Source: Iphione sp. A-MEVVRFRX5 (taxonomy: Eukaryota). From it: a stretch of 64,000 nucleotides of DNA. How positions within the stretch are numbered: the stretch's first letter is position 1; the number at the start of each line of letters is the position of its first letter. Positions 47,968 through 63,345 of the stretch are shown here, piece by piece. The notes below the pieces were generated by a model. The model saw only the letters and a list, made by a program, of their open reading frames with translations, ran no database searches and was not told where the DNA came from. The position numbers and the translations under genes were made by a program. The DNA lies in contig OZ320314.1 in NCBI GenBank assembly GCA_976226885.1, forward strand, positions 48,918,001 through 48,982,000. The letters run 5' to 3'.

Positions 47968-50900
47968 GAGAAAGAGAGGATGAATCACGTGATGGTGTCC
48001 AGTTTCAACCACTTATGACGTCACGGGGTCGTTGTACGGAATTTGTCAAAGGCCATTTCTCATCCGACCGAAGTGTATTGGTGTATCGGTCTTAGTCATC
48101 ATATATTTTAAACTGAGCATATGAGCTAATCTTACCATAATCATTTTTGAGAACCCAAACATTTGCAGAACAAACCGTAAAACCTCACTATCACAGTACT
48201 GCCTGGTACAAGATGATCACGTTTGTAATAGTGAGGGTACTGGAGCATTAAGTAGTGTCCTCCTTAACCATGTACGTTTGCTCAGAATAACGAGGGTCCT
48301 CAAATAAGGATCAGGTGTGAGACAGAATCAAGTCTATATATTCATGTTAGTATTAGGGACATCCCACTCTACAGACAGTTTATGGCCAGTCCCTTTGCTG
48401 TTCGTATTAGAAAGGCCTGACTTTATATATACATATATATATACTGAAACTTTTACTAGAAGTATGAGGCCCTTGGTGGAGTCTCATAATTCCCAGGTGC
48501 ACGGTAAACCAGCAATTGTTGTCAATGCGTGGGAAATAACCTTTACGTTTGGCTACTGCCCTCTCTTCCAACAGCATGCCCACCTGCAGGAAACAGCCAA
48601 GAAACTGCAGTCCTGAAAATGCCTTGGCACGCTGCCATACTCTGATAATAGCACTGAGCTGACCCCTCTAATCAATATTAACCAATCAGGACCCATCAGT
48701 ATTTGCTCGCCAGGTGGCAGCACACAGACAAACATGGCGGAGCCCAGTGTGTTGACGGCTCCAGATGAAATGGTTTTGCCTCAGTTCCGGTTAACAGAAT
48801 GAGATTAACGCTCCATGCTCTATTTCACTCATTTTTGACACTTGCGAAGTGCAAGGTATTGATTAGCTGAGGACACTTGAATACTGACGCCCACTAAAAT
48901 ACAATTATTGATGAAACTGTAGTAAATGTTACCCACTTTGTGAGCACAAACTTATGTAGTGAGGAACCATTATGAGATAGACTGCTTTACTAGATTACAG
49001 CTGGAGGCCACTACTTGTCAGACTGCTTCATCAAATTTTCAGTGGTAAGTGATAGTTATGCGTGTTTGTTTGAAGAGAAATATGACTGATTCGTGGTACT
49101 TACCCACTAAGAACTCCTAGAACTAAGTTGAGCATAAAAAAGGATCCCAGAATTATGAGGGGAAAAAAATATATCCAGTTAAAATTGCTGCCGAGTGCAT
49201 CATTGGTCTGAAATGAAATAGAAAAAGCTGGAATTATTCACCTCGCACAGGACACAATAGTAAAAAGCTCATATTATCCATAAAATAGCAAGAATTAAAT
49301 AAACTATCAATCAGAATTATAAACTATGATAAAAAAGCAAACTTCACGGCTGTGATTATTTGAAATATGGTCAATAAACATATTATTACACACATATAGC
49401 CAAATGCCACATTCTGGACAACCATACTGTGGATATGAGTATGCTGGCCACCTTCATTACAGAACCAAATTATTTGACCTTATAGTAATATCATTCAATG
49501 ATTTGGGCATCACCACCCTGTAGACAGCTTATGCTCAGAATCCAGCCCTGTCCTTAATGTGGTGTTTTTGAATACACAATCACTTACATGATATAAAAAT
49601 AGCTACAGAACACCTGATTTCAAATGGGACATTCGTGACATGATAAATATGGACGATCACTCACATAATATAACACGGTGGTCCAGCCCTCCATTGTGAT
49701 GCATTGGAATACAGTCAACATAGCATAGCCGATATTGTCGAAGCTTGTAATGCCGTAGTTGGGCCCTTCCCAGTACAACTGACACTCGGACTGGTTAGGG
49801 CATTGGAATCCCCCTGGAGCACGCTCCTTCACTAACGCGCACGGAGTAACCTCTTGTTCCCCTGCCGCATCTAGCTCACCTGAAAAGTAAGCGCCGCTTA
49901 CCTTTATGTAACAGAGCGTCAACGGATGTAATAATCCACATATGAAGTCAACTGATTGACATACATACGGTAGCCCACTCTGGGAAACTAGTTTTAAAAA
50001 TATAGCGGAGTAATACGGCTCATCCACAACGTAAGCCCCGTCTTCTGTATGAAACAGCATGATGGGCGTGTGGGTGTATGCCTCAGTGGGTCTACCTCAT
50101 CTCCCCCCAAAATAAGATATCCTTTTCTATATCTGAGATTTTTGTTACATTATCGCAGTCCTTTCTATCCTAAGTATGTCCAAGGAGAAGTAAGCTGCAG
50201 TACCTAATATATCACACCTACTGACTTCTTTAAAGACCTAAACTTGTTGGGCACCCACTGTAGGTAACAGTGTTGTACAGTTGACACAGTGTTAAGACCA
50301 AATCGCAGGATAGACCAACTAAGAGGAGAGGCCAAAATCCTCCAGTCTCAAACTGTTTGTTAATATTATTAATTACCTGCCAAGGGAGACAAACTCTGTC
50401 AGAGACTAAAATCATACAGTCCCTAGGTTGGTCTCCTATGTAAGTTGGAGCTGTATAAGCAAAAATCAATGTCTAGTGACATGTTACCTGTTTGTCTGTT
50501 TCTGCAGGCTGCATGAAAAGCACCATTGTAGAACTCTAAGCCGATAATGGCGAATATGACGATGGCGAAGAGCACGAGGAGGCCTATTTGTAGTAAGGGC
50601 GCCATCGCCCGTATGATTGACTTGAGCACAACCTGTAAGCCTGCAAGGAAACATCTCGCCGTCAGGGGCGAGTTGCTGTCGAGCAACTCACCCTGAGCTC
50701 CGCTAAAAAGGCTGAGACAGTTTGGAGGTCAAAAGGTCATAGAAGGAAAGGGAAGGTAACTTCTGACTACGATGAGTGATTCTAACCTTTTAATTTTAAG
50801 GCGCTTTCAGAAATATGCCACTCTAAGGTTAATGGAAATTTTCACGCGACAATTTTTTAAATGTTGAAGGGTATAGGACTGTCATTTGAATAGTTGAAAA

Positions 50901-53900
50901 AATTCCAGTAAACACTTCTCAGAATGGACGCCATGTATGCTTTTTCAATTTAAGTGAAGCACGTTTAGAACGTAACTTTGGCAAAGTTACTCCAACATTT
51001 TTTTTCCCACATGAAATCTCCCTTCCTTGATACATGCGTATGTACTAATATTAGAATACACATGTATAATTTGGAAACTATCAGCAGCTATTTATCTCAC
51101 AAATTAATGTGAAGTAAAAAAGAGAATCGAAACCACGCATCTAATGCAAACGGAAACTTTAAGTAGTTATATCAATACATCCAAGAACAAACGCTTACGT
51201 CTCATGCTTTATAATTGTAGAGAAAATCTTTTGTCATCAAATATTATTCGAAAAAGAAGATAGTAAAGCATGCGTTCTTAAACTGATTGAAGCACGTGGC
51301 AATCCACTCATGGGATTTTCGTTTGTAAATGCTACTCATGTAAACATTATTATCAATATTCCACATGCATTTAGTTTTCATTTACTTTGTTTTGCAGAAC
51401 GTATATCATCTTTAAGGTACTTATCTGAACATGGCAAAGACACTGGTTTATTAAAATTACCAATTCTATACACAGGAACAGTTAGCAGATAATTTATCCA
51501 TTAGTAGTATTTCTTTGTTGGAAGAAAAGACTAATAAATGTATAATTTCAAATGTCCTCTGAAAATAACATGCTTTAAAACATTCAAAACAAATTCATTG
51601 CATTAAGTATGAAAAAGATCATATATATAACACAATATTGGTTAGGAGAATAAACATTTAGTAAAACCATGATTCCGGAAAGGAGGTTGAAATATAAGCT
51701 CTTTTATAGACATTTTCATCAGGAGAGGAAAAAGGCGTCAGAACACATTTAGTAACGCACATCGTGGTGCACCGAGTACACAGAATAATCCCTATAATCA
51801 TTATGGTAACCAGTTTGATCAGAAAACAGTACGATTAATCCTTAATGTCAAGCAGTAGAAGGAAGTTGAAGGTTTCACGATACAGGTTTTAGTCGCACAC
51901 TCATGCTCTGATGTGAGTAGACAAGTGCTTACCAGTTGATGCATGCATGCAAGGTACCCTGCCTTTTTCTTAGTAGTCCTCATGCAAGTAGCTAGTTAAG
52001 GAGTAATTCATTAGACGGTTAACTGGTCACAAAAGTACATTCAGTACCATTGTCAGCTATGGTGTCCCTGGCCTACGCCTCTGCACCTAGTAGTGCGCTG
52101 TGCAGAAAGCACTGTCTTTGCTATTCAAAGGGTCAGTGAAGAACGTTGAGAAGGTGGATCTAGCATTAATGGAGTCGCCCACGTTTAAGGCGAGGTGGGA
52201 AGGGATGATGTTCTTCGAAGGCGTGCCCTTACATTTGGGAGGTGGCTTTGGTCATTGGGAGAAGAGGAGGAGGGAAACAGACAGGGCAGGTGTGACATCA
52301 CGACACACGGGAGTTAAATTGGGCTAGGTGTGGAAAGGATTAGCAGTTACACAGAACAAAAGATGAAAACAGAATTTGCAAAAGAAACATGAAAACACCC
52401 CCTTCCTTTATAATCACCTATCGTTCTTGAGATTTTGCTATAGGTTTACTACTAAAACGAAAACGCCATCATATGCATCCTTTCAGCGTAGAATTACAGT
52501 GGATGTTTACTTCTAAATTTTACGTCAACTTTACAGAGACGCGGGCCATGCCAGATGCTAACCTGTCCCCTACATGTCTCTTAAAATCTATATAGCTGTC
52601 TGCCAAGGCCCGTCAGGAACTTAGCTATGTCTACTCTATACCTTCTAATGCGATCATTGGAAGGGCCAGCTAATTCTTCCCTTAATGGAGAGTAACCTTT
52701 GATAGACAGTTGCTTTTCTTCCATATCATATACTATTAAGATATTGTCCTCATTTCTGGGCTGCCCTCGCAACTGGGTTGTCCTTGGGGTGAATTGCTAC
52801 TGTGCTTCGTGATTCACATGGAAAAATGATCCGACTACTTAATTTAGCCCTCAAAGCCGGTTATACCCTCGCAGACTCGACGATTTAATTAACAGAACGG
52901 GCGTGGCTTGTCCGATAATGACCCCACTGATCTGCCTGGTGACTAATGGCTCCAGCAGGTGTGGGAACATACTGGGGAACTATTTAATGAAGAGACCTCC
53001 ACTCTCCACAACATGGATCATCCTCCAAAACTACATATAGCAGTGGATGAGGTTGCATTAGAACGTCTACCCGTACTAGCTTCCTTGTCTGTCTGTCGGT
53101 CCGTCTGAACGTATCTATTAGTCTCACTGTCTCCGCTCTTCTATTTCGATGCCTGTCTGTCCTATGGGCTGTTAGTCTCTCTTTCCTATTATCCATCTGT
53201 CCATTTGCAACTTTCCTCTGTACTACTTAGTTCCACCCATCCATCTCTAAGGCCCAATTTCCATATATCTGGACTTTGTATCGGCGCCACAGATAATTAT
53301 GTGTATTAAGAAAAAAAGACACGATGACTTTCTACATGATTGTTTCCATGTATCTGCACCTGTGGTCTGTGGTCCATGGTTTTTGGTCCGGAGATGGAAA
53401 ACAGACAATGTTTGTTTTTTCCTCACCATGGACACACACAGATGAGTAGGCTCAAGAAATGGATGTCTTAAGAAGGAAAAACATTGTATAACATATCTTA
53501 GATAATATGAATTATTTTATAATTTGCATATCATTTGCATAAAAAACACGATTTCCATTGATATGCCTCAATCTCCATAAAAAAATGCACAAACTTTCTC
53601 CTTCTTTGTTTCTCTGCACCACGGATGAGCAGGGACATGTAAATTTCTCTCTCCCTCTCTTTCTCCCTCCCTCCCTCCCTCTCTCTCTCACCCTTGTACA
53701 TGGAAATTGGGTGTCCATGCTTGTCGTAAAAAATGCTGGTTTTCCGCACTGTCAGAGACTACAGAAAAAAACCCACACATTTGAAAACTAGGCCTTAATT
53801 CTTTTCTTTCTCAATCTCATCGTTTTCACCATGCATTTCTTACCATTGCCTCTTGGCCCTTCAGTCCTACCATGGTTAACTTGTATCTACGTACAAAACA

Positions 53901-56900
53901 CGCACTCTTGGCCATTATCCCCAGCACGGTGGTCGATCTGACAGTAGGTAATGGCGATGCCAACATCCCTATCAGAGGGCTTTACACATAATGGTATCAC
54001 GAAAGGTTGGGAGAATAATTTTGCTGAGCTGCTCGAAACTGCTCGTCGTCCTGACATTGGAGTTACTTGCTCATTTGTCATCGATAGACCCTTACGCACG
54101 ATACAATTTTCTTGAACTGAATGTGGTTCAAACCGTTTATAAAGGGAATGCTCGGTAGGAAAAGCACCACATTTTCTCCATCTAATGTGTATGCCAGCCA
54201 GGTTTTGCTCAACAGAACCAACGGAATTCGATCACACCAGGAGTGGTGGTACCGACCAATGGCGGGGCGCGCCACAATTATGTAAGAGTTCGCATCACTC
54301 ATTTTTTTGGTGTAACACGAGTGCACTAACACCGCACTAAAAATTATATTCTTTTGTTGCTTATCTATACTTAAAAAATGAAAACCCGGTGCTGAGGACT
54401 TTCACACATAGTGACATGGCAACTTTTCTACCCAAATGATCAGAAAAAAATACACTGATGAGGTTTTTGAAACAGCGGTAGCTGGTAGCGGCAAACACTT
54501 GCCCGTCGCCTTGGATATTATATCTCGAACACAATACAAGTTAGAGCTAATGGCCTAACGATGTCTGTGGTTGAGGTTCAAGGCAACCGGCCATAGAGCA
54601 TGGGTGCTCCTAGATTAAAGCTCTCGTCAAAGCTCCACCAGTGGGGCGAGACCCTCTCGGTCGCATGTGCTGTAAGCGAGCGGGCGCGGGCTTTAGCCTT
54701 CCCCCAACAAGGTGACATTATGGCGGGACCCAGTGAGCTGTGAAAATGGCATTCAGAGCATTCTGCTCTCTGCTTCCAGCAGGCCGATCCTGGTTAGCCT
54801 AGAATCTTTCATCCCCAGCCAAATTTTGCCTTTCTGGAGCCACGTGTCACCCACGTGGAAAATAACCCCAGTCGGGCGAATACGCACAGTTAACCGGGGA
54901 GTAAAAAATTTCCGAGCGCTTTCAAAAGTATGCCAGCAGCGCCAATTCATAGCCGATAGGTATGCATATGACGAAATTAAATGAAAGTAGAATTTGACAT
55001 TTGATTACTTTTTTTGTTCTTCTACGGATTGCATTTTTTGCGTTTGCATCTTACATGTATTGAATCAGGATTTGCCCCGAGTCTCACACATTTCAGTTAA
55101 CAGTACTTAGCATAGATACAAGTGCAAAATTAGTAAAGGGTTAGTGACCATTGTAGCACTTATCTATGATGTGCAGCATAATACAATTTATAAAGTGAAG
55201 TATTTTGGACAGCTTTCCTATTAGTCGTCTTAATTTTATTTGTAGGTGCGTTGTTACAAACGGCCAAGAAAGTAATCTGATAAAATTTTAGGACCTTATA
55301 AACTAGAGAAAAATAAAAATTGCATTCTTACATGATGGTAGTTAGATTTAAGGCATTCCATTTCAAATATTTGACCTTATTGAATTGATCATTCATGCCT
55401 TTAGGTATTTGTTATGAAAAATTGAGGAAAATCAAAAAAGAAATCTAAAGGCCTCAAAAATGGACATTGATGCCAAAATGCAAATTCAGTGAAGTTATAC
55501 AAAACGTATTTGGCGAAAATACGACTTGTAAAGTTTTCGCAATATTGTAATTGCCGAAATTCGACAGGTTCCAAAATACATAAAGAAGAAAATATCACAT
55601 GACAAAATTTAAATTCCCATTCCCAAACAGTCAATTGTTATCCAAAGGCAGAATCTGTATAAAGGCAAAGTGACAAAAAAATCAGATCCTCCACCTTTAA
55701 ACCTTTTTGGTCGCGTTAGGAAATCTCACAGACTTGCCAGAGAATGTAAAACAAAGAAATATAATCAATGGAATTAATAGAAAGAAAAACGAGTAGAGGG
55801 GACTAAAATTAGTGTCGGACGGTGGTTAACCAAAGACAAAAAAGGCCTTGTCTTATACGTACTTGGTATTCCCGAGACCAACTTGAGGGGTCTCAATACT
55901 CTGACGGCTCGAAGCGTTCTCAAATCAAAGTTATCTCCAGAATTCCCCCCACTAACAGACAAGGTTATAAACCTAAAAGATGGAGAAAAAAATAAGCAGG
56001 AACCTTGGTCAGGATCGGACAAAGACATCACATAGGTAATGAGCCTTTTGTAAAGGCAACATAGATTAAATCAATGATCTTCTCGTGGGTGAGGGAGTGA
56101 GGGTTCCTTCGCATCGCCTCCAAGACGTGGAGGTGGGAAGGTGAAGTGAGGACGGAGGCCTGCCTTGACCTCCAGCAAGGGGTCGCGGTAGGACGCAGAG
56201 AGGGGACGGGGTGGACTTGGGGTCCATTGCGGAGGGTTACAGCGTCCACTGCTGGTCGATGATCACTCGCTAAAAAGCATTCATCAACCAGAAACCTGAG
56301 TGACTACTTGGCAAGGTAGCGTCACACCCACAGTTGCAACGTTAATCAGAGGCAATCAGGCACACAACGTTTTTTTAAAGGAAATAGAAATGCCGATAAA
56401 ATGCCTGCTATTTCTGAAAGATAAACCGGAAACTTCATTGAAATGGTTCGATTACAATCATACAGCAACCATACCTAGTTGTCACGCAGGTGCTGTTGCA
56501 AGAAAAGGCACTTTTATTGAAAAGGGCAACGAAAATGAATTTTAAGAGGTCCAGGGAGGATCGAGGCAGTAGAGGAAATCCACCTAGACGGAGGAAAAAA
56601 AGTCGGGAGGATCACGTGAAAACAAGTTATGTGTAGAGTTGGGGTTTTAAAGAAAGACGATGATTCTTGGCTATGTAGCAGTTATGGCTTGGTAACTGGT
56701 GTGTAGAGGTATATTGTTCTCTCTCTTCATACTCACTGCAAACTTTCAATGCGCAGGAGGGTCCAGGGACACGGTCCTTTGACTATAGAAACTCCAAGCT
56801 GGCTTCGACTTCACTTTATGAGCATTTGGTTCGGTCGTTGTGTACTTGCCTGTTTTCTGTTTACTTTTAGTCATGTTGGACGCATCGTTCGAATACAGGT

Positions 56901-59900
56901 AATTGTCTACCTAATTTACCGGATTATTTAAGGATACTATGCGGTTATTGGTAGCTATCTGCTTAATACTAGAAGGCATTAATGTCCATATGGGATGGGT
57001 AACCTGTGTAACATTTAGAGGGAATTTGCTTTTGTTGGCGTGAAATGGATTGTTTGTAGCTTCCATCTCCGGTTTCAATTTTTGAAGGATATCTTTTCTG
57101 ATGTCCCTCTTTACTGTACTTTACTGTGCCTTTCGAAAATGGCTATGAGATTCATACATGTGTAAGGCCCTAGTGATCCTCTGATCATTTTTCAGAAGCT
57201 CATTAAATTCCCGCTTGCATAAACGACTATCAAACCAATTGGATTCTTTTCTCCTTTCCGTTGCGGTTACGCCAATTAAACTGACTTACTGATTGTTCCA
57301 GCTTGTTTAATTCCATGAAATGTCGTGTTTTATATCTTATGACAGAATATAGTGCAATCTTTTTTTTTTCAAATTTCTCTAACCCTGATGGACCGAAGCG
57401 GAGGGGGTACACACTCGCCAACAGTCGAAGTTGAGGCGGTGGCGGCTCGGACAGTTGCCTCGGTCATCGACCCCGCCCATCGCTGATTTCCCACGTGCCG
57501 TGCTGACCATTTCAATGACCAGTCTGTCTCTCACCGTCACTGGGTAAGCCCAACACAGTAGGTCGGTCGAGAAGCGGGGAAGCGGGGAAGCAAACCTATG
57601 GGGTGGAGAGGCAGTGGTAGGGTGGTCTGGTGGTGGTGGCGTTGGTGGTGATGGTGGGAGACAGATGATGACAATGATGGTGGCCAGCATCACCAGCGGC
57701 GCAAGTGGCGGTCCTAGGGCAGTTTTTTGTTTCAGTGCACAAGCCATTCCACATATTATGGCGCCTGCATGACATACACAAGCAAACCAACTTACGCACA
57801 CACACAAACACACACATGCTCCAACACACACATTATCAATGCACGCGCCATATATGCAGTCCCTCCTCCGTGTGCCACTGCGTACTTGTCACGCCTGTAC
57901 CATCACTCCCGATGAGCTGCTCTCTCGACTTCTCTCTCGTTTTAACTCAATGCTCCCCGGCCGAGTCTGACGGGATGCAGGCGCCATTAATACCGCAGGA
58001 TTGCTTTTGATGGCAGATGCTGTGTCAGCGGCTGACATGACGCCAGTGTGCGCATTATTTGGCCAGCATGCAGTTCTGCAAGGCCCAACAGCGTGTCCTG
58101 GGCATCTCTAAGGCCCCGTTCAAATACAACCGGACAAAAAATCCTTCCCCGGACACAGGTGCAGAGAATACCCCCTGCAGATATTGTTGTTAATTGATCA
58201 CATATGCTCACCAGATGTATTTTACTATAGGCTCTTATGGAATCTGGATCCGGATCCGGACAAAATCCATGCTCAATGGGTTCACATTCTGTGTTCACAT
58301 GCGGACACAGAATGTGAACCCAATATCTGTATGTATGTGAACCCAATATCTGTATGTATGTGAATGCCTTCAATAGTATAGGAGGGCTGGAGAAATATCC
58401 ACACCCGTGTCCAGACGCGGAACGGAAATATCCGGTTGTATGTGAGAGGGGCTCGAGAGGCAGGAATACCAACTGCCCATTAACAATGCTTTCCTCATCT
58501 TCCACCCGCTATGTCCCGAGGCTGGCCCCCTTGAGCACTTTCCTAATGATAAAGGGCTACCCTGGGAAATCACAATGAGCAATGCTGAATATTGTCAACA
58601 ATATTTATCGCGAGGCATTGTCTGTCCGGCTTGTACGTCATATACAAGATAACGCCTAACAAGACGGGAGGAAATGTTCATCAAACCTCTTTACCCTTAC
58701 TAAGCTGTGTTTTGAACTGTCGATTTCCTACAGGCAATCCATACGTGAAGCTACTTTTACTAAAGAGGTATTAATTTCTATAATTAGAGTCTATATTTCG
58801 GTTCTCTTGCTTGCTTTCCATGGCTACAGCTCTTGGCTTCCGACTGCCATGATGTTTCTATTGAGGGTACGGTAACGCCTGTGCGATACTATAACTACTC
58901 CATGTACATCCCAGTCAGCTAACACTCATTGTACTCGGTGCTGATCATTCACTGCTCTAATTAATAACAATGAACCGGTGAGCCCGGGCATCTAGTAGGC
59001 TAGTGGTACCAAGCACGCATCGGGGGCGCACAACTGTATAAATTATGTTAGAAAAACTACACTGTAGCACTGTGGTTCTTCGGCAAGGACAGTTTATGTG
59101 AAGGAAATATGGACTATGTGTACCACATCAACGACAACGAACTGACACGTACCTACGTGCTACGATACCAGAACGCATTATATATGTGAACAGTCGATAG
59201 GCACTAGTGTTTGCACGGCAAATATTGCAGTCAAATATGTACAGATATATATGGGCACAGACAATGGTAAAGGTATAGCACTGACTAGAATACTCAGTTA
59301 CACTATAGGGCTTCTTAGATCGATGTTGAAGGTGAAACCACCTTGGTCAGGGAGGGGTTGGGGATGGAAAGGTGATCGTTATTTACCTAACTAGAGCTAC
59401 TGCTCTGGATCTAAAGCCTAGAATAGCATCTCATGGCAGGGCAAGGCTATCACGGGAGGTCAACAGAGAGACAGTGTAATTGCAAAGGAATTTGAACCTC
59501 CAAAAATTCTATTATTTTAAGAAGAAAAAATAATCACAGTTCACATGAGATTCCGTTATTCAAAACGTATGATCCAGGAAAAGTGTTGCCTACCAACAGG
59601 TTTTCTTTGAACAAAAAGAAAACAAAAAAACCTGTGCATCTGCATGCAAAAATCAATGATTTTCTTTCAATAACCGATACATTTTGATTGAGATATACGC
59701 CTCAAATTTGTTGTATGGAAAAATCGGTCGGCAGCATTAGTAATTAAGTCAAACTAAAATACAAAGGCAGAGGGAGACAGAATGTATTGTCCTTGCCCTG
59801 CGGTGGTGATACATTTCTAAGCAACAGATTTCTATAACTGATAAGTGTACTGACCTTTCTAGTTCCAATTTCTTACTCACTACTTTTACTAACAATGATT

Positions 59901-62900
59901 ACCAAGTTTCACTGAAACCATATCTTTTTTTTTGAGATTTGGAACCAAATCATGAAAATATGCCGGCTTAAATTTAGACCTTGAGATTTTGAGGCCGAGA
60001 TAGGTACACACCATGATGAGTTCTATTATACGAGTAAGGGGATCCTTCGGGGATGGGGGAATTTACCATGTACGCGACGTAATTAAGTCCCTTAAACATC
60101 ACATACATGGTGAATTCCTGAAATACAGGTATTTGAATATAAATGCCAGTCCTCGTCCCATACTAGACGATGTGCAGCATACCATGGTTTTGGATTTGTA
60201 GAAGTAACATTTTCTTACTGACGTGTTCTCTACTGAAGGGGCAGTGATAATGAATCTGTGATCCTACTTGTTCTAAAACTGGGAGGTTGGCTAACTCAAA
60301 GAGGGCCTCTATCAATTTGAATGAAATAGCTTGGAATACAATCGCACCTAATACTCCACTTACAATACGCATACGATATACACATGCACGTGTTAAGCAA
60401 CATGTGTATATGCGTAAGCATAATGAAGGATATCGCGAAAGGAACGCTTAAATTGAATTAAAATCACTATGGCAGCTAGCAAGTAGGGAACCATAAGCGC
60501 GTTAGCTTATGTTCCGCAGTGAAATGCAAACATGCATAAAGGTATATGTGTTTTGGTATATGCAATTCAATAAATGACGTTGTAGCAGCAAACGCTCACA
60601 ACCATGGCCACTTTGGCGAGAGTTTGAGAAGCACGGAATTGATCGTAAAAAGCAATGAGAGCGGTGTTATGTTGTTGATATATTGAGGTGAGAATGAAAT
60701 TAACATGGTGTTGGAATTTTCAGGAGTCTTTTAAGGAAGTATTTCATTGTCTGTAATTAGGACTAATCAGAGCTTGCCCTTGTCTTAGTGATTGTTCGAT
60801 TGGTTTCGGATAAACAAATCAATGCGTTTTCAAACTGATTCAGATTAGCGAGCGTGGATCACCGTTTGCATTGAGCGCATGCGCCAACGGAAGGAAAGCA
60901 ATCGATTTTTGTGCATTTGCGATTGTGTCCTGGGACAGCTTTTTAATTGTCGTGAAGGAAAAAGGAACTGTTTAAAGATGTGTGGCTGTGAGATGTATAT
61001 GTTTGAAAGTAAAATTAAAACTTAAAACAGGAGTAAAATATACATATATATAGTACTGCGTCCACTTGAGACAAAGGTCTGTGATCACTTACTTTCAAAC
61101 CCCGTAACCAATTTGAGGGGACGTAAAACCCTTATTGCTCTTAAGGCCGGCTGATCAAAGTTTTCACTAAATAATGCAAGTAACCTGTAGGGAATAGAAG
61201 TAGTAACAACAGACAATGTTAAACAGTCAGATTCACGTGACGAGGTCGGGCGACAAAACGGCGCCATCTGCTGGGAGAAAGAGAAAACACAAAAAGGAGA
61301 GATCATTTGAACACTACTGACAACATCTAACGGACAACATCTAAGCAGTTTAACGTCAAAGTTAACGCAAGGGACTTAAGAATTCATGACTTCTTTCTTG
61401 TTTGGAAGTGCGTGATTTCTATGTGTAAAACTTGTGACATTCGCGCATGAATTCGAAACATGTTTGTATCATTGTGATGATTTATGAAGGGCATTCAGTA
61501 CGAGAGAATGTCGGAGAATGCATTCTAATAAAAGAAAAGTGATTGGTGTCAAATAAGAGCATTTGTGAGTTTACATTCTATAAGGATATCATTTGTCATG
61601 AGCTCTTTTGCAACAACATTATCACAATATATTTCTGTGATAAGAAATAGATATGACAGTTTTTTTCTTATCCATTTGGGAACGCAGGCCAGAGGTCCAG
61701 AGGTAATGGACGAACATATTTAATTGGTAAATGAAAAGCTTTCGCTCTTCCTCTCGGGACCGGTAGCATCTTCCCAAAAGGAAAGACACTTATAATGACT
61801 AGCACGAGAGCAAACAAGATAACTACAAGCACATTCGTTTTACTTGTTGAGCCTCATTGATCCCCATGCGCAAGGTTGTAACATTAGAAGTGGAGTACTA
61901 CTCAATTTCAGTTTATACGTATGTGCTTCCAGCCATCGGCATTTGCGGAAAGTAACTGGCGTAACAAGACACCGTGACCTAGATCGGTTTAAGTGGCTTT
62001 TAGACTTAGCAGAGAGCATCTTTACTCGGTCTGAACCCGACTCAGTGAGCCTGACAAGCTTTACTTCTACTTTTGAGGATTATGTGGGAGGCCTGGTCGA
62101 TGCTGCGGTTAAATCCATGCCAAGCAACCGTCCAGGGCTTCCGAACAAAGGATACAAGTTTCAGGCAGTGACACGGACATAAATATCGGCTCTCATTCAA
62201 AAAAGGTAGAAACCAAGGTTGTAAAGAAACGCTGGCTATAATTAGACAACAAATGGCACGGCGCAACCTGAAACGGTAGCATCGAAATGTCGGCCTTGTT
62301 TGGTTCCAGGCAAATTCAAGGTAACATTTGAAGCTAAACAATTGACAGATTCCATCATAATTAAAGCAGTATGAGCATCAGCAAATCGATTACTACAGTT
62401 TCTACTGAATAATGTGTGATCTTTATAAGGTATGAAATATCAATAAATTAATTGTGTATCAATATTCTACAGTATTGATATTAACAATTAGCAAACATAG
62501 ATTACCACTATAAAGCTACGTTTTTATAATAATAATAATAAAAATCTCAGAGTAATGTTGGCTTCTACACATATATTTTGGAGAAGATAACTTATGTTTT
62601 TATTATAGAAATCCGATAAATACCGCTTAGCTATTTACTATCTATATTGAAACAAGATTATTCTACGTTTACGGTACCACTATGCCTCATCATAACGGTA
62701 GCGTAGATGAAATGGAAGCCAGCCTGATGAGCTTGTAGCTATAAAGCTGTGCACAATGCTGCAAAAATTATCACCTACCCCGTAACCACGACCACAAAAT
62801 CCATTATGTTCCAAACGTTTCGTAGGTAGGCCCCTTTGTGTAGTACAAATCCTAGTGCAACGATTTTTAATAAAGCTTCTACACAGAAAATTCCTAGGAA

Positions 62901-63345
62901 GTAAACTTCTGTTTGTTCCTGCAAAATAAATACATGTGATGGTCATTAGTAACTGTGTGATATTTGTTTCGTGGTACTGTAAAAACAACATGTTGTATCT
63001 ATTTTCAAAAGCATTAAGTGATATATAGGTTCTCATTCAATGTTTATATGAAAATAAACTTGAATAAAAAATAAAACTTGAAAAAAAAAATGAATTTCAG
63101 CGTTGCTCCTTGCTCGTGTAACGGCGGGTTTACCACATAATGAAAACCGAACAAAACTCGAACTATATTAGAACCAAGTAACACCAGTTTCCAGTGCACT
63201 TGACTCGGCAAGTCATGTTGCTGGGTAAGGTAGACTTACAAGCTGTAAGGCGAGCGGTGTTTTGTCCCCTTCCGGTAGGTGCTCCTCCAACGCCAGAACG
63301 ATGCAGTTGGCAATGATAGTGAGCAGCACCATGTACTCGAAAGGC
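7081..63345 (-). CDS. Cav2: Multi-exon gene for a voltage-gated calcium channel alpha-1 subunit, Cav2 family (co-ortholog of CACNA1A/B/E; cacophony/unc-2-like); partial at both ends
   Basis: Phase-consistent exon chain encodes S1-S6 repeats with pore motifs TMEGWT (I), TGEDWN (II), TGEGWP (III), [22 protein letters not shown] and Cav2-typical [13 protein letters not shown]. Many exon sizes match those I recall for vertebrate CACNA1A (106,140,92,153,104,116,113,113,132,73,161,202,165,111,84 nt). Confidence 0.98.
9158..9283 (-). CDS. Cav2: Cav2 alternative IVS1-S2 exon B ([42 protein letters not shown])
   Basis: 126 nt; caacatgcag / gttggc; phase 0 to 0; paralogous to exon A. Confidence 0.9.
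9971..10081 (-). CDS. Cav2: Cav2 alternative IVS1-S2 exon A ([37 protein letters not shown])
   Basis: 111 nt; tttgctctcccag / gtaaga; phase 0 to 0. Confidence 0.94.
12879..13043 (-). CDS. Cav2: Cav2 exon, III-IV linker and IVS1 ([55 protein letters not shown])
   Basis: 165 nt; aatttccag / gtaagt. Confidence 0.97.
13557..13758 (-). CDS. Cav2: Cav2 exon, IIIS6 ([67 protein letters not shown])
   Basis: 202 nt; gttgacag / gtgcaa. Confidence 0.97.
13803..14176. repeat. Degenerate minisatellite, ~42-bp unit, about 8-9 copies
   Basis: Repeated CCTGTTTCCACTACATAGTTTGCAACACTTAGTAGTATAC-like units in the intron between the domain III pore and IIIS6 exons. Confidence 0.85.
14313..14456 (-). CDS. Cav2: Cav2 exon, domain III pore ([47 protein letters not shown])
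   Basis: 144 nt; ttctttcag / gtaagt; phase 2 to 2. Confidence 0.96.
14961..15121 (-). CDS. Cav2: Cav2 exon, IIIS5 ([54 protein letters not shown])
   Basis: 161 nt; tcttttcag / gtaagt. Confidence 0.97.
15510..15612 (-). CDS. Cav2: Cav2 exon, IIIS4 ([34 protein letters not shown])
   Basis: 103 nt; gtgttacag acceptor; GC donor AAG|gcaagt, required for a phase-0 join to AVFDCVV. Confidence 0.95.
16338..16349 (-). CDS. Cav2: Candidate 12-nt microexon, IIIS3-S4 loop (LRLP)
   Basis: tatctctctgttcag|ATTGCGTTTGCC|gtgagt; phase 2 to 2; no stop. Confidence 0.55.
16700..17050 (-). mobile_element. Decayed LINE reverse-transcriptase fragment, tentative
   Basis: Minus frame [11 protein letters not shown]...FLHDII.*KYVD resembles GVPQG..LGP...NDL...YVDD; heavily mutated. 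Confidence 0.25.
18201..18218 (-). CDS. Cav2: Candidate 18-nt microexon, IIIS3-S4 loop (NCKACG)
   Basis: gatttctgctgctttactatag|CAACTGCAAAGCCTGTGG|gtaagtgag; phase 2 to 2; no stop. Confidence 0.65.
20814..20920 (-). CDS. Cav2: Cav2 exon, IIIS3 ([36 protein letters not shown])
   Basis: 107 nt; atttccag / gtaagt; phase 0 to 2. Confidence 0.97.
21580..22234 (+). mobile_element. 5'-truncated LINE (CR1/L2/Crack-like) 3' end with a (CATTGT)n tail
   Basis: ORF2 C-terminus-like text [14 protein letters not shown]...[20 protein letters not shown]...FKAQIK, then a 3'UTR, AATAAA and tandem CATTGT. The 5' boundary is approximate. Confidence 0.75.
22715..22904 (-). CDS. Cav2: Cav2 exon, IIIS1-S2 ([63 protein letters not shown])
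   Basis: 190 nt; ttattttgcag / gtacgt. Confidence 0.97.
23168..23345. mobile_element. Short Tc1/mariner-like MITE
   Basis: Imperfect TIRs CAGCGGAAAGTC / revcomp CAGTGGAAAGCC; TA on the left; internal repeated TCTCTAAT-GGGAC motifs. Confidence 0.5.
23895..24009 (-). CDS. Cav2: Cav2 exon, end of II-III linker ([39 protein letters not shown])
   Basis: 115 nt; ctttttgcag / gtgagt; conserved [17 protein letters not shown]. Confidence 0.95.
25519..25625 (-). CDS. Cav2: Cav2 exon, II-III linker ([35 protein letters not shown])
   Basis: 107 nt; tttctttcag / gtgaga; phase 2 to 1 bridges the flanking exons. Confidence 0.8.
26926..27074 (-). CDS. Cav2: Cav2 exon, II-III linker ([49 protein letters not shown])
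   Basis: 149 nt; ttcattgtag / gtaagt; phase 0 to 2; only frame that fits. Confidence 0.8.
28153..28203 (-). CDS. Cav2: Probable Cav2 exon, II-III linker ([17 protein letters not shown])
   Basis: 51 nt; aactttcag acceptor; donor CAG|gtcaac is weak, so the 3' end of the exon is uncertain; phase 0 to 0 fits its neighbours. Confidence 0.65.
28295..28303 (-). CDS. Cav2: Candidate 9-nt microexon, II-III linker (LSK)
   Basis: gtgcaacgcttcag|TTATCGAAG|gtaagt; phase 0 to 0. Confidence 0.55.
29784..29884 (-). CDS. Cav2: Cav2 exon, IIS6 end ([34 protein letters not shown])
   Basis: 101 nt; U12 branch TACCTTGAC then ctctccag; donor gtaata (alternative donor gtgagt 21 nt further on). Confidence 0.93.
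29885..30504 (-). other. U12-type GT-AG intron inside IIS6
   Basis: 5' GTATCCTTG (30496-30504); branch TACCTTGAC (29898-29906) followed by tagccctctccag. Confidence 0.9.
30505..30625 (-). CDS. Cav2: Cav2 exon, domain II pore and IIS6 ([40 protein letters not shown])
   Basis: 121 nt; attgcag acceptor; U12-type donor GTATCCTTG. Confidence 0.96.
31451..31523 (-). CDS. Cav2: Cav2 exon, domain II pore loop ([24 protein letters not shown])
   Basis: 73 nt; tctttctag / gtaggt. Confidence 0.95.
33513..33644 (-). CDS. Cav2: Cav2 exon, IIS4-S5 linker and IIS5 ([44 protein letters not shown])
   Basis: 132 nt; ttccatcag / gtaagt; phase 2 to 2. Confidence 0.97.
34332..34447 (-). CDS. Cav2: Cav2 alternative IIS3-S4 exon C ([39 protein letters not shown])
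   Basis: 116 nt; catggcag acceptor, GC donor AG|gcaagt; phase 0 to 2; intact frame. Confidence 0.85.
35168..35280 (-). CDS. Cav2: Cav2 alternative IIS3-S4 exon B ([38 protein letters not shown])
   Basis: 113 nt; ctatgacag / gtgagg; phase 0 to 2; intact frame. Confidence 0.92.
35696..35720. repeat. (GA)n microsatellite just downstream of IIS3-S4 exon A
   Basis: agagagagagagagagagagcgaga. Confidence 0.9.
35759..35871 (-). CDS. Cav2: Cav2 alternative IIS3-S4 exon A ([38 protein letters not shown])
   Basis: 113 nt; actatag / gtaagt; phase 0 to 2; closest to the canonical sequence. Confidence 0.95.
36723..36835 (-). CDS. Cav2: Cav2 exon, IIS2 ([37 protein letters not shown])
   Basis: 113 nt; tttttgcag / gtaagt; phase 1 to 0. 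Confidence 0.96.
37201..37328 (-). CDS. Cav2: Cav2 exon, IIS1 ([42 protein letters not shown])
   Basis: 128 nt; gtccatccag / gtaagt; phase 2 to 1. Confidence 0.96.
39025..39124 (-). CDS. Cav2: Cav2 exon, I-II linker ([34 protein letters not shown])
   Basis: 100 nt; tctttccag / gtactc; conserved GSPFAR motif; phase 1 to 2. Confidence 0.92.
39212..39742. repeat. Long foldback inverted repeat (~240-bp arms, ~40-nt loop)
   Basis: 39212-~39454 is the near-perfect reverse complement of ~39495-39742 (gaggccatagtctgacggttgatagcactg... / ...cagtgctatcaaccgtcagactatggcctc). Confidence 0.95.
39907..40017 (-). CDS. Cav2: Cav2 exon, I-II linker ([37 protein letters not shown])
   Basis: 111 nt; ctctacacag / gtaaga; phase 1 to 1. 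Confidence 0.9.
40200..40220 (-). CDS. Cav2: Candidate 21-nt microexon, I-II linker (GYLSTMS, next codon T)
   Basis: GATATCTCTCCACCATGAGTA; ctttctccag acceptor, gtaagg donor; frame-preserving with no stop. Confidence 0.55.
42770..42781 (-). CDS. Cav2: Candidate 12-nt microexon, I-II linker (adds ARIK, next codon S)
   Basis: CTCGCATAAAAT after a very long pyrimidine tract ending gatccag; donor gtgggt; frame-preserving with no stop. Confidence 0.5.
43542..43601 (-). CDS. Cav2: Cav2 exon, I-II linker ([20 protein letters not shown])
   Basis: 60 nt; ttttgcag / gtgagc; phase 1 to 1; EEVIL follows the AID as in other Cav2 channels. Confidence 0.93.
43747..43862 (-). CDS. Cav2: Cav2 exon, AID / beta-subunit binding site ([38 protein letters not shown])
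   Basis: 116 nt; ttttgcag / gtgagt; phase 2 to 1. Confidence 0.97.
45419..45544 (-). promoter_or_regulatory. Candidate internal promoter and first exon: CRE palindrome, TATA-like box, GC-rich leader, 5' splice site
   Basis: 14-bp palindrome CTGTGACGTCACAG (45531-45544); ATAAATA 10 nt downstream of the CRE on minus (45517-45523); (GGT/GGC)n leader; donor gtacgt at 45418. Confidence 0.35.
46018..46058. repeat. (TGTC/TC)n simple repeat
   Basis: tctgtctgtctgtctgtctctgtctgtctctctgtctct. Confidence 0.85.
47926..47978. repeat. (GA)n microsatellite
   Basis: Visible GA/GAAA run. Confidence 0.95.
49104..49207 (-). CDS. Cav2: Cav2 exon, IS6 ([35 protein letters not shown])
   Basis: 104 nt; tttcatttcag / gtaagt; read directly from the sequence (absent from the ORF track). 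Confidence 0.97.
49665..49879 (-). CDS. Cav2: Cav2 exon, domain I pore loop ([13 protein letters not shown]...[34 protein letters not shown])
   Basis: 215 nt; ttttcag / gtgagt; contains the domain I selectivity glutamate. Confidence 0.96.
50488..50640 (-). CDS. Cav2: Cav2 exon, IS5 ([50 protein letters not shown])
   Basis: 153 nt; ttccttgcag / gtaaca; phase 1 to 1. Confidence 0.97.
53645..53690. repeat. (CT/CCCT)n simple repeat
   Basis: ctctctccctctctttctccctccctccctccctctctctctc. Confidence 0.85.
55863..55972 (-). CDS. Cav2: Cav2 alternative IS4 exon B ([37 protein letters not shown])
   Basis: 110 nt; tcttttag acceptor, gtacgt donor; phase 2 to 1; canonical IS4. Confidence 0.96.
58112..58453. 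mobile_element. Non-autonomous TIR element (Harbinger-like MITE)
   Basis: Ends GGCCCCGTTCAAATACAACCGGA / revcomp AGCCCCTCTCACATACAACCGGA; internal inverted repeat gggttcacattctgtgt...acacagaatgtgaaccc and a short tandem duplication. Confidence 0.55.
61093..61184 (-). CDS. Cav2: Cav2 alternative IS4 exon A ([31 protein letters not shown])
   Basis: 92 nt; ctattccctacag acceptor, gtaagt donor; phase 2 to 1; open frame with an S4 pattern. Confidence 0.88.
61790..62330 (+). mobile_element. Decayed LINE ORF2 fragment (endonuclease-RT linker), tentative
   Basis: Interrupted text resembling TR.N..., F.STF...LVD...P and ISALIQKR*K; multiple stops; similarity judged by eye only. Confidence 0.3.
62779..62918 (-). 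CDS. Cav2: Cav2 exon, IS2-IS3 ([47 protein letters not shown])
   Basis: 140 nt; ttttgcag acceptor, gtaggt donor; phase 0 to 2. Confidence 0.97.
63240..63345 (-). CDS. Cav2: Cav2 exon, IS1 ([35 protein letters not shown])
   Basis: 106 nt; preceded by a non-canonical AC acceptor with a U12 branch site; donor gtaagt. Confidence 0.95.

What the first reader, a model, noticed from the sequence alone, without database searches (positions are those of the whole stretch)
55863..61184. Two IS4 exons, one with the first gating arginine replaced by proline
Seen: exon A (92 nt) reads [22 protein letters not shown]; exon B (110 nt) reads [23 protein letters not shown] has four basic S4 residues against five in B, a loop six residues shorter, and IP changed to FE at the start of the S4-S5 linker. 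Both are phase 2 to 1, so including both frameshifts. Established: cacophony has an IS4a/IS4b pair. Inference: A would shift the voltage dependence of activation. Whether the pair is homologous to or convergent with the fly pair is open.
Basis: partly seen in the sequence, partly recalled or inferred. Interest (0 to 1): 0.75.

Follow-up and report, generated by a model that had tools for sequence, protein, structure and literature searches.

The report
Ancient either-or IS4 exons, Cav2 channel
A presynaptic-type calcium channel gene of a marine invertebrate carries two alternative versions of the exon for its first voltage-sensing helix, one lacking the outermost charge, and the same pair is kept in molluscs, other worm-like animals and (as annotated isoforms) echinoderms, so it is an old and apparently undescribed way of making two kinds of channel from one gene.

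Summary
On the minus strand of a Cav2-type calcium channel gene, exon A (61184-61093, 92 nt) and exon B (55972-55863, 110 nt) lie between the IS2-IS3 exon and the IS5 exon. Both have AG/GT borders and the same phases. Using one keeps the frame; using both gives a stop two codons into B, and skipping both shifts the frame.

B matches human Cav2.1/2.2 at 22 of 22 residues. A has Q-P where B has L-R (the outermost S4 arginine, human Cav2.1 R192), a loop six residues shorter, and GFES instead of GIPS.

A is not a decayed copy. It is 92 nt with intact splice sites in nine genomes, with saturated synonymous change and almost no change in the S4 core. RefSeq isoforms of a sea urchin and a feather star use A-type or B-type in one gene, and flatworm models use A-type.

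The fly IS4A/IS4B pair sits at the same exon position but looks different: both copies keep the outer arginine. Orthology is unresolved.

No RNA run was listed for this genome, so use of A here and any gating effect are inferred.

The parts
62779..62918 (-). Constitutive IS2-IS3 exon (140 nt). It ends ...[10 protein letters not shown] + GG of a split Gly codon. Donor GTAGGT lies at 62778-62773.
   Evidence: The same exon lies upstream of the A-type exon in L001 and Littorina L022.
61093..61184 (-). Exon A (92 nt): short IS3-S4 loop plus IS4 with Q-P in place of L-R(R1), and GFES at the start of the S4-S5 linker. Acceptor ctacAG, donor GTAAGT.
   Evidence: It is 92 nt with conserved splice sites in 9 genomes. 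Pairwise differences in 8 of them: pS 0.80, pN 0.13 (0.05 in the S4 core).
55973..61092 (-). Intron of 5120 nt between A and B. No conserved block or convincing docking/selector pairing was found in it.
   Evidence: only short inverted repeats; similarity to relatives is confined to the exons.
55863..55972 (-). Exon B (110 nt): longer IS3-S4 loop plus canonical Cav2 IS4, [23 protein letters not shown]. Acceptor has a strong pyrimidine tract; donor is GTACGT.
   Evidence: It matches human Cav2.1/2.2 at 22 of 22 residues. B-type exons of 101-107 nt sit at the same place in L001, L003 and Littorina.
50488..50640 (-). Constitutive exon for the S4-S5 linker and IS5 (153 nt). It starts GC TTA CAG (completing the Ser codon, then [17 protein letters not shown]...).

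Best explanation
Exons A and B are an old tandem duplication of the Cav2 exon that encodes the IS3-S4 loop, the S4 helix of voltage sensor I and the first residues of the S4-S5 linker. They are used one at a time, so a single Cav2 gene yields two channels that differ only in voltage sensor I.

- B gives the canonical sensor: five basic residues, a GIPS elbow and a longer extracellular loop.
- A gives a sensor without the outermost charge (R1 replaced by Pro, preceded by Gln), with a loop of vertebrate length and Glu in place of the elbow Pro.

Shown: the anatomy; frame compatibility of each single choice; frame failure of both or neither; strong purifying selection on A; conservation of the arrangement in other phyla; and use of A-type or B-type in annotated isoforms of relatives.

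Inferred:
- A is spliced in this animal, probably in a subset of cells.
- Exclusivity is enforced at least by frame, with decay of the wrong products, plus regulated splice-site choice. A has consensus donors and B has weaker GTAYGT donors.
- A changes activation and/or inactivation gating of the channel. The direction of the change is unknown.
For: - Anatomy and frames.
- B is canonical Cav2. A aligns gap-free to Cav2.2 179-207, with Q-P opposite L188-R189.
- The A-type exon is present as a 92-nt exon with AG and GTRAGT borders in 9 genomes.
- In 8 of those genomes, Nei-Gojobori mean pS is 0.80 against pN 0.13, and pN 0.05 in the S4 core. Flanking introns are unalignable.
- A profile search of 1.84 billion proteins found about 33 A-type representatives, distinct from the canonical Cav2 and Cav1 types.
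- The order IS3-A-B-IS5 is seen in the window, L001, L003 and Littorina saxatilis.
- One gene gives both isoform types in two echinoderms. Lytechinus variegatus X7 is A-type and the 13 other L. variegatus isoforms listed are B-type. Antedon mediterranea X5 is A-type and 14 others are B-type.
- Flatworm Cav2 models use A-type.
- A-types from lophotrochozoans and echinoderms fall on one side of a branch with support 86/95.9.
- IS4 is rate-limiting for Cav activation, and its charges shape activation slope and inactivation (PMC6096772). IS4 exon choice changes activation voltage in the fly (PMC11828482).
Against: - There is no RNA evidence from this genome.
- The isoform evidence in relatives comes from automated gene models that I could not check against reads.
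- Published surveys of Aplysia Cav2 splicing list no IS4 site (PMC5818475, PMC10657410), although an Aplysia partial model holds an A-type exon. This could mean rare or restricted use.
- No intronic pairing elements were found.
- The tree rests on 23 columns, and the key branch is not strongly supported.
Confidence: 0.82

Rival explanations
1. The pair is the direct orthologue of the arthropod cacophony IS4A/IS4B pair. On this view one duplication occurred before the protostome radiation, A corresponds to IS4A (upstream) and B to IS4B (downstream), and the fly's upstream copy later regained the outer arginine.
For: - Same exon and same 1+3n+1 phases in the arthropod-like loci L020/L021, where both exons are 101 nt.
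- Same upstream/downstream layout.
- The downstream arthropod-type exon starts FITM..., like lophotrochozoan B exons (FITL/FITI).
- The upstream arthropod-type exon shares Ser in R-S-x-R with mollusc and sea urchin A-types.
- The AU test does not reject joining arthropod exon 1 with the A-types (p 0.41).
Against: - Both arthropod-type exons keep D-L-R (R1) and G/R-IPS. Neither has Q-P, the short loop or the F/I-E-S ending.
- The fly cac cDNA carries Arg135, equivalent to human R192 (bioRxiv 10.1101/141366); Bell et al. state that the rescuing UAS-cac1 construct contains IS4B. IS4A has one more positive charge, not one fewer (PMC11828482, PMC12370356).
- In the best tree the two arthropod-type exons pair with each other (support 76/85.6) among the B-types.
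- L020/L021 are unnamed contigs. Their arthropod origin is inferred from agreement with the published description: 33 full codons each, 14 differences against 13 published, and an extra Arg in the upstream exon.
Confidence: 0.25
2. Exon A is a relic. It would be a duplicated exon that is no longer spliced, or is included only as noise leading to decay, and the channel is made with B only.
For: - No RNA run could be listed for this genome.
- Only 1 of about 15 listed RefSeq isoforms per echinoderm uses A.
- Aplysia splice surveys do not report it (PMC5818475, PMC10657410).
- A's pyrimidine tract is weaker than B's in most genomes.
Against: - An unused exon would not keep its frame, length, both splice sites and 19 of 31 invariant residues while synonymous sites saturate (pS 0.80, core pN 0.05).
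- A-type is the IS4 of flatworm Cav2 models.
- A alone preserves the reading frame.
Confidence: 0.06
3. The A-type exons of echinoderms and of lophotrochozoans arose independently. The similar sequence (x-Q/V-P-A-x-R, short loop, F-E-S) would then be convergence under a shared functional demand, so the pair is not of bilaterian age.
For: - Only about 23 alignable residues are available.
- Support for the A-type branch is 86/95.9 and not starred.
- The sea urchin A-type ends NIPS rather than GFES, and the feather star has V-P rather than Q-P.
- Duplication of this very exon has happened independently in chordate sodium channels (exons 5a/5b, both 92 nt; PMC12772994).
- I could not fetch echinoderm DNA to check exon order.
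Against: - The Pro at R1, Ala after it, Ile/Leu before the third Arg, and the 92-nt length (31 residues) are shared across both groups.
- All A-types form one group in the best tree.
Confidence: 0.3

Closest known systems
Drosophila cacophony (Cav2) exons 5/6 = IS4A/IS4B (Bell et al. 2025, PMC11828482; PMC12370356)
   Same: - Same gene family.
- Same exon (IS3-S4 loop, IS4 and start of the S4-S5 linker), and in arthropod-like loci the same phases.
- A tandem pair used one at a time.
- The copies differ by one positive charge.
- In the fly, exon choice changes activation voltage and synaptic localisation.
   Different: - Both fly-type exons keep the outermost arginine and the IPS elbow, and are equal in length.
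- The fly's extra charge is in the upstream exon.
- Here the upstream exon has lost R1 (Pro), has a shorter loop and has Glu for the elbow Pro.
- The pair here extends to molluscs and echinoderms, whereas Bell et al. state only that the fly's two pairs are not conserved in vertebrates.
- Orthology is unresolved.
Vertebrate sodium channel SCN exons 5a/5b (5N/5A)
   Same: - The homologous exon of a four-domain channel (domain I S3-S4).
- 92 nt, duplicated in tandem and mutually exclusive.
- Double inclusion or double skipping shifts the frame (PMC12772994).
   Different: - A different gene family and a separate duplication of chordate age.
- The copies are about 91% identical and do not remove an S4 charge.
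Human CACNA1A R192Q (familial hemiplegic migraine type 1)
   Same: It neutralises the same position, the outermost IS4 arginine R1 (PMC9864995), which exon A replaces by Pro (alignment).
   Different: - It is a disease point mutation, not a regulated isoform.
- It substitutes Gln, not Pro, and does not carry the loop and elbow changes.
- Its reported effects vary by system: a hyperpolarising shift in HEK cells and none in oocytes (PMC9864995). It therefore gives no firm prediction for A.
Aplysia/mollusc Cav2 alternative exons (33a/33b in IVS1-S2, e24a-like insert in IIIS3-S4)
   Same: Lophotrochozoan Cav2 diversified by alternative exons in voltage-sensor regions (PMC10657410, PMC5818475).
   Different: Those surveys list no site in IS4. 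The A-type exon seen here in Littorina, Bulinus and an Aplysia partial model is not among them.

Membership tests
Cav2 (N/P/Q/R-type) alpha1 subunit, domain I S4 exon | Best sequence match to Cav2 IS4 rather than Cav1, Cav3 or Nav | tested here: met
   B: Cav2.2 E 1.9e-12, then Cav2.1, Cav2.3, then Cav1. A: the same order, Cav2.2 E 8.9e-06.
Cav2 (N/P/Q/R-type) alpha1 subunit, domain I S4 exon | Basic residue at every third position of S4 | tested here: met
   B has R-R-R-R-K. A has the inner four (R-R-R-K) in register, and the outermost is Pro.
Mutually exclusive tandem-duplicated exons | Two homologous exons side by side between the same constitutive exons, each with canonical splice sites | tested here: met
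   There is no third copy.
Mutually exclusive tandem-duplicated exons | Either exon alone keeps the frame; both or neither breaks it | tested here: met
   A+B gives a stop two codons into B. Skipping both gives a frameshift.
Mutually exclusive tandem-duplicated exons | Both copies kept by selection in relatives | tested here: met
   A. B. The arrangement recurs in L001, L003 and Littorina.
Mutually exclusive tandem-duplicated exons | Transcripts carry exactly one of the two | tested here: inconclusive
   No run was listed for this genome. RefSeq isoform sets of Lytechinus and Antedon carry one or the other, but their read support could not be checked.
Orthologue of fly cacophony IS4A/IS4B | Same exon position and phases | tested here: met
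   Arthropod-like L020/L021: both exons are 101 nt, 1+3n+1, between IS3 and IS5. The taxon of these contigs is inferred.
Orthologue of fly cacophony IS4A/IS4B | Upstream copy carries one more positive charge; both copies retain R1; equal length | tested here: not met
   Here the upstream copy has one charge fewer and lacks R1, and the lengths are 92 and 110 nt (PMC11828482; PMC12370356; 10.1101/141366).
Orthologue of fly cacophony IS4A/IS4B | Copy-by-copy grouping in a tree (A with IS4A, B with IS4B) | tested here: inconclusive
   The best tree pairs the two arthropod-type exons (76/85.6). Forcing exon 1 to join the A-types is not rejected (p-AU 0.41). Only 23 columns are available.

The most novel reading that the evidence does not exclude
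The A/B pair dates to the last common ancestor of protostomes and deuterostomes. On this reading it encodes a conserved functional split of the single invertebrate Cav2 channel into a canonical sensor-I form and an R1-less, short-loop form with different activation threshold, inactivation or subcellular targeting. That would be an isoform-level counterpart of the Cav2.1/2.2/2.3 gene split in vertebrates, which have the B-type only. The fly IS4A/IS4B switch would then be either its remodelled descendant or a replacement for it.
Probability: 0.4. Interest if true: 0.8.

Novelty: new member of a known kind. Interest (0 to 1): 0.6.

Why it matters
Invertebrates mostly have one Cav2 gene for all fast transmitter release. 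How they tune it is therefore an open question, and the only studied voltage-sensor switch is the fly's.

This pair gives a second switch that is apparently older. It naturally removes the very charge mutated in human hemiplegic migraine (R192). It is present in the genomes of electrophysiologically tractable animals (snails, sea urchins, and probably Aplysia), where published splice surveys missed it. Annotation pipelines also stumble over it: Littorina's gene model is split at this spot.

The question is directly testable by cloning both isoforms and comparing G-V curves, inactivation, G-protein modulation and localisation.

Tried and rejected
- RNA evidence. The look-up of sequencing runs with exon A alone and with the whole A-B stretch listed no run, so read laying could not be used.
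- Docking/selector RNA pairing. Inverted repeats in 50600-62800 are short (14-29 nt, 79-93% complementary) and none recurs. blastn against eight related loci found similarity only in the exons. No structure-based mechanism can be proposed.
- Structure. AlphaFold2 of Antedon domain I with the A exon and the B exon gave mean pLDDT 48.4 and 47.6. I did not use the models and ran no fold search.
- Word search with a 96-residue region of the Antedon A isoform. It returned mostly vertebrate Cav2 (117 B-type, 1 A-type).
- Word search with a 42-residue A-type region of Schistosoma. It reached flatworms only, so neither search gave arthropod proteins.
- Fly exon peptides. They are not in the text of the papers held, and Smith 1996 and 1998 are not held. 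A search for the peptide string found nothing.
- Echinoderm locus. The look-up of the Lytechinus protein was not on record, so exon order in echinoderms is unknown.
- My early idea that the fly exons (99 bp in PMC11828482) have different borders was wrong. The arthropod-like exons are 101 nt with the same phases, that is 33 full codons plus two split ones.
- L019 turned out to have a single IS4 exon and says nothing about arthropods.
Full report
**What is there.**
The window carries most of a Cav2-type calcium channel alpha1 gene on the minus strand. Around the finding the gene model is as follows.
- An IS2-IS3 exon at 62918-62779 (140 nt). It ends ...[10 protein letters not shown] plus GG of a split glycine codon, with donor GTAGGT.
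- Exon A at 61184-61093 (92 nt; ctacAG|G...A|GTAAGT).
- A 5120-nt intron.
- Exon B at 55972-55863 (110 nt; ttttAG|G...A|GTACGT).
- The exon for the S4-S5 linker and IS5 at 50640-50488 (153 nt).

A encodes [31 protein letters not shown] encodes [36 protein letters not shown]. Both are 1+3n+1 nt. Translating the four possible products gives these results:
- A alone and B alone each run on into [18 protein letters not shown]...
- A plus B hits a stop two codons into B.
- Skipping both shifts the frame, with a stop 52 codons into the IS5 exon.

A sensitive tblastn of both peptides against the window finds no third IS4 copy between IS3 and IS5.

**Identity of the two copies.**
B matches human Cav2.2 and Cav2.1 at all 22 residues from FDLR to GIP. 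Its best solved-structure matches run Cav2.2, Cav2.1, Cav2.3, then Cav1. A gives the same ranking and aligns without a gap to Cav2.2 residues 179-207, which places Q-P opposite L188-R189. That arginine is the outermost basic residue of IS4. In Cav2.1 numbering it is R192, called R1 in PMC9864995, the site of the migraine mutation R192Q. At the DNA level the cores of A and B share 41 of 67 bases, so the duplication is old.

**Is A a live exon?**
A word search with the open frame around A found nine other genomic open frames. All read F[DN]QP[AS][LV]RA[IL][14 protein letters not shown] and then run into unrelated intron-derived sequence. I fetched the DNA of seven other genomes. Adding the window and Littorina gives nine genomes in all.
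- In every genome the exon is 92 nt, with an AG exactly 26 nt before the F-D/N codons.
- The donor is GTAAGT in the window and the seven other genomes, and GTGAGT in Littorina.
- Nineteen of 31 residues are invariant.
- Pairwise Nei-Gojobori counts give mean pS 0.80 (saturated) against pN 0.13, and pN 0.05 in the 22-codon S4 core.
- blastn finds no similarity beyond the exons.

A decayed duplicate would not look like this.

**How far does the pair reach?**
A profile of the eight A peptides, searched against 1.84 billion representative proteins, gave 138 hits at E up to 0.001. About the first 33 carry the A-type signature. The rest are canonical Cav2 (FDLRTLRAV...GIPS) or Cav1 (FDVKALRAF...GVPS).

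Named holders of A-type IS4 spliced between IS3 and IS5:
- Schistosoma japonicum KAH8859404.1 and many other flatworm Cav2 models.
- Intoshia linei OAF66841.1.
- The snail Bulinus truncatus KAH9505336.1.
- Antedon mediterranea XP_071948425.1 (isoform X5).
- Lytechinus variegatus XP_041481260.1 (isoform X7).

An Aplysia partial model (XP_035829518.1) and Littorina saxatilis XP_070175557.1 also carry an A-type exon joined to IS3. In them the sequence after the exon is not IS5.

In both echinoderms the other listed isoforms of the same gene use a B-type exon: 14 in Antedon and 13 in L. variegatus. The same either-or choice is therefore annotated in deuterostomes.

At the genome level the order IS3, A, B, IS5 is found in:
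- the window;
- L001 (a 21% G+C genome, with all four exons within 3 kb);
- L003 (A, B and IS5 on the contig);
- Littorina saxatilis chromosome CM074573.1.

A is always 92 nt. B is 110, 107, 101 and 104 nt in these four genomes. The echinoderm B-type peptides (39 and 43 residues) imply 116 and 128 nt if the phases are the same. A keeps the length of the human exon, since the alignment is gap-free, while B carries lineage-specific loop insertions.

Because Cav1 and the single-exon forms seen here (L019, P0179) have a basic residue at R1 and a G-I/V-P-S elbow, the A-type features are the derived state.

**Relation to the fly pair.**
Bell et al. (PMC11828482) describe cacophony IS4A and IS4B as 99 bp and 33 residues each. 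They differ at 13 residues, and IS4A carries one more positive charge. IS4B is needed for active-zone localisation and sustained high-voltage current. The eNeuro paper (PMC12370356) places IS4A (exon 5) upstream of IS4B (exon 6). It adds that the more used exon 6 carries less positive charge.

Two unnamed contigs (L020 from a JGI metagenome and L021 from Logan) fit that description.
- Between an IS3 exon (...IWNIMDFFVVVTG) and an IS5 exon lie [33 protein letters not shown] and [33 protein letters not shown].
- Each has 33 full codons in 101 nt. They differ at 14 residues, and the upstream copy has the extra Arg.
- I take these contigs as arthropod, by inference only.

They show that the exon borders and phases are the same as here. 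They also show that both copies keep R1, and neither has Q-P, the short loop or the FES ending. The fly cac-eGFP cDNA has Arg135 as the equivalent of human R192 (bioRxiv 10.1101/141366). According to Bell et al., the rescuing UAS-cac1 construct contains IS4B.

I built a maximum-likelihood tree of the 23-residue core.
- All lophotrochozoan and echinoderm A-types fall on one side of a branch (support 86/95.9, not decisive).
- The two arthropod-type exons pair together (76/85.6) among the B-types.
- Forcing the upstream arthropod exon to join the A-types is not rejected (p-AU 0.41).

My reading is that the A/B pair is a separate and probably older switch than the fly's. The fly pair is either a later duplication of the B-type or a strongly remodelled descendant. 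I put orthology at about one in four.

**How it most likely works.**
Shown: only one of the two exons can be used for a full-length channel.

Inferred:
- The choice is regulated at the splice sites.
- Products with both or neither exon are removed by nonsense-mediated decay.
- One conserved asymmetry may matter. All nine A exons have consensus GTRAGT donors and often modest pyrimidine tracts. All four B exons have GTAYGT donors, and three of the four have strong tracts.
- Steric exclusion is ruled out by the 5.1-kb intron.
- I found no competing RNA pairings.

On function:
- IS4 movement is rate-limiting for Cav1.2 opening. Neutralising its charges flattens the activation curve and alters inactivation (review PMC6096772).
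- R192Q in Cav2.1 gives a hyperpolarising shift in HEK cells and none in oocytes (PMC9864995).
- The fly's IS4 choice changes activation voltage (PMC11828482).

A therefore very probably changes gating, and its Glu-for-Pro change at the S4/S4-S5 elbow may change coupling to the pore. The direction and size of these effects cannot be read from the sequence. My two AlphaFold models of domain I were too poor to use (pLDDT 48).

**What is not known.**
- No sequencing run could be listed for this genome. Use of A in this animal is therefore inferred from selection and from relatives.
- The taxon of the window is not established here. Earlier scan notes call the genome annelid-like. I did not test that.
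- The closest A-type exons are on unnamed contigs.
- Exon order in echinoderms could not be read.

**Novelty.**
- Mutually exclusive voltage-sensor exons are a familiar device: fly cacophony, and chordate sodium channel exons 5a/5b, which are also 92 nt (PMC12772994).
- The papers I could search describe an IS4 pair only in Drosophila.
- Two surveys of Aplysia Cav2 splicing, one of which also compared oyster and octopus, list no IS4 site (PMC5818475, PMC10657410).
- An R1-less A-type exon shared by worm-like lophotrochozoans, snails, flatworms and echinoderms therefore appears to be undescribed, although it sits in public isoform models.
- I file it as a new member of a known kind, with a real chance that it is a bilaterian-age isoform switch.
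- The same gene also has three alternative IIS3-S4 exons (sibling finding s1-347227). Voltage-sensor diversification by exon choice thus seems to be a general feature of this channel.

Noticed in passing
window 34322-35817, minus strand: Three IIS4-like exon copies ([57 protein letters not shown]) turned up in the tblastn scan. This is the sibling finding of three alternative IIS3-S4 exons in the same gene.
   Followed up: no
L022 (Littorina saxatilis CM074573.1) 15808-22750: RefSeq splits the snail's Cav2 gene at this spot. XP_070175557.1 (133 aa) is IS2-IS3 plus the A-type exon read through its donor into the intron, and the next model starts at the IS5 exon. The either-or pair seems to derail automatic annotation.
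   Followed up: partly
P0015 (Intoshia linei OAF66841.1): A protein named 'mitochondrial folate transporter/carrier, partial' is a fused model. It contains a Cav2 domain I with an A-type IS4 ([23 protein letters not shown]).
   Followed up: no
window 61092-61087 and 55862-55857; L001, L003, L022: There is a conserved donor asymmetry. A exons have GTAAGT or GTGAGT in 9 of 9 genomes. B exons have GTACGT or GTATGT in 4 of 4 genomes. This may be part of how the choice is set.
   Followed up: partly
L001/L002 (ENA metagenome contigs): This genome is very A+T-rich (21% G+C), with TA-microsatellite-filled short introns. It carries the whole IS3-A-B-IS5 block within 3 kb. The organism is unknown.
   Followed up: no
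L019 9612-12216: An unnamed compact Cav2-like locus has a single IS4 exon ([23 protein letters not shown], with Lys at the R1 position) between IS3 and IS5. It is an example of the unduplicated state.
   Followed up: partly
window 58277-58357: Inside the A-B intron there is a perfect tandem 23-mer (58312-58334 and 58335-58357), overlapped by a 23-nt palindromic arm pair (58277-58322). It is probably a small repeat element.
   Followed up: no
window 62918-62779, 61184-61093, 50640-50488: The exon sizes 140, 92 and 153 nt are, as far as I recall, those of vertebrate CACNA1A exons 3-5. That comes from memory and was not checked here. It would mean the intron positions around IS4 are very old.
   Followed up: no
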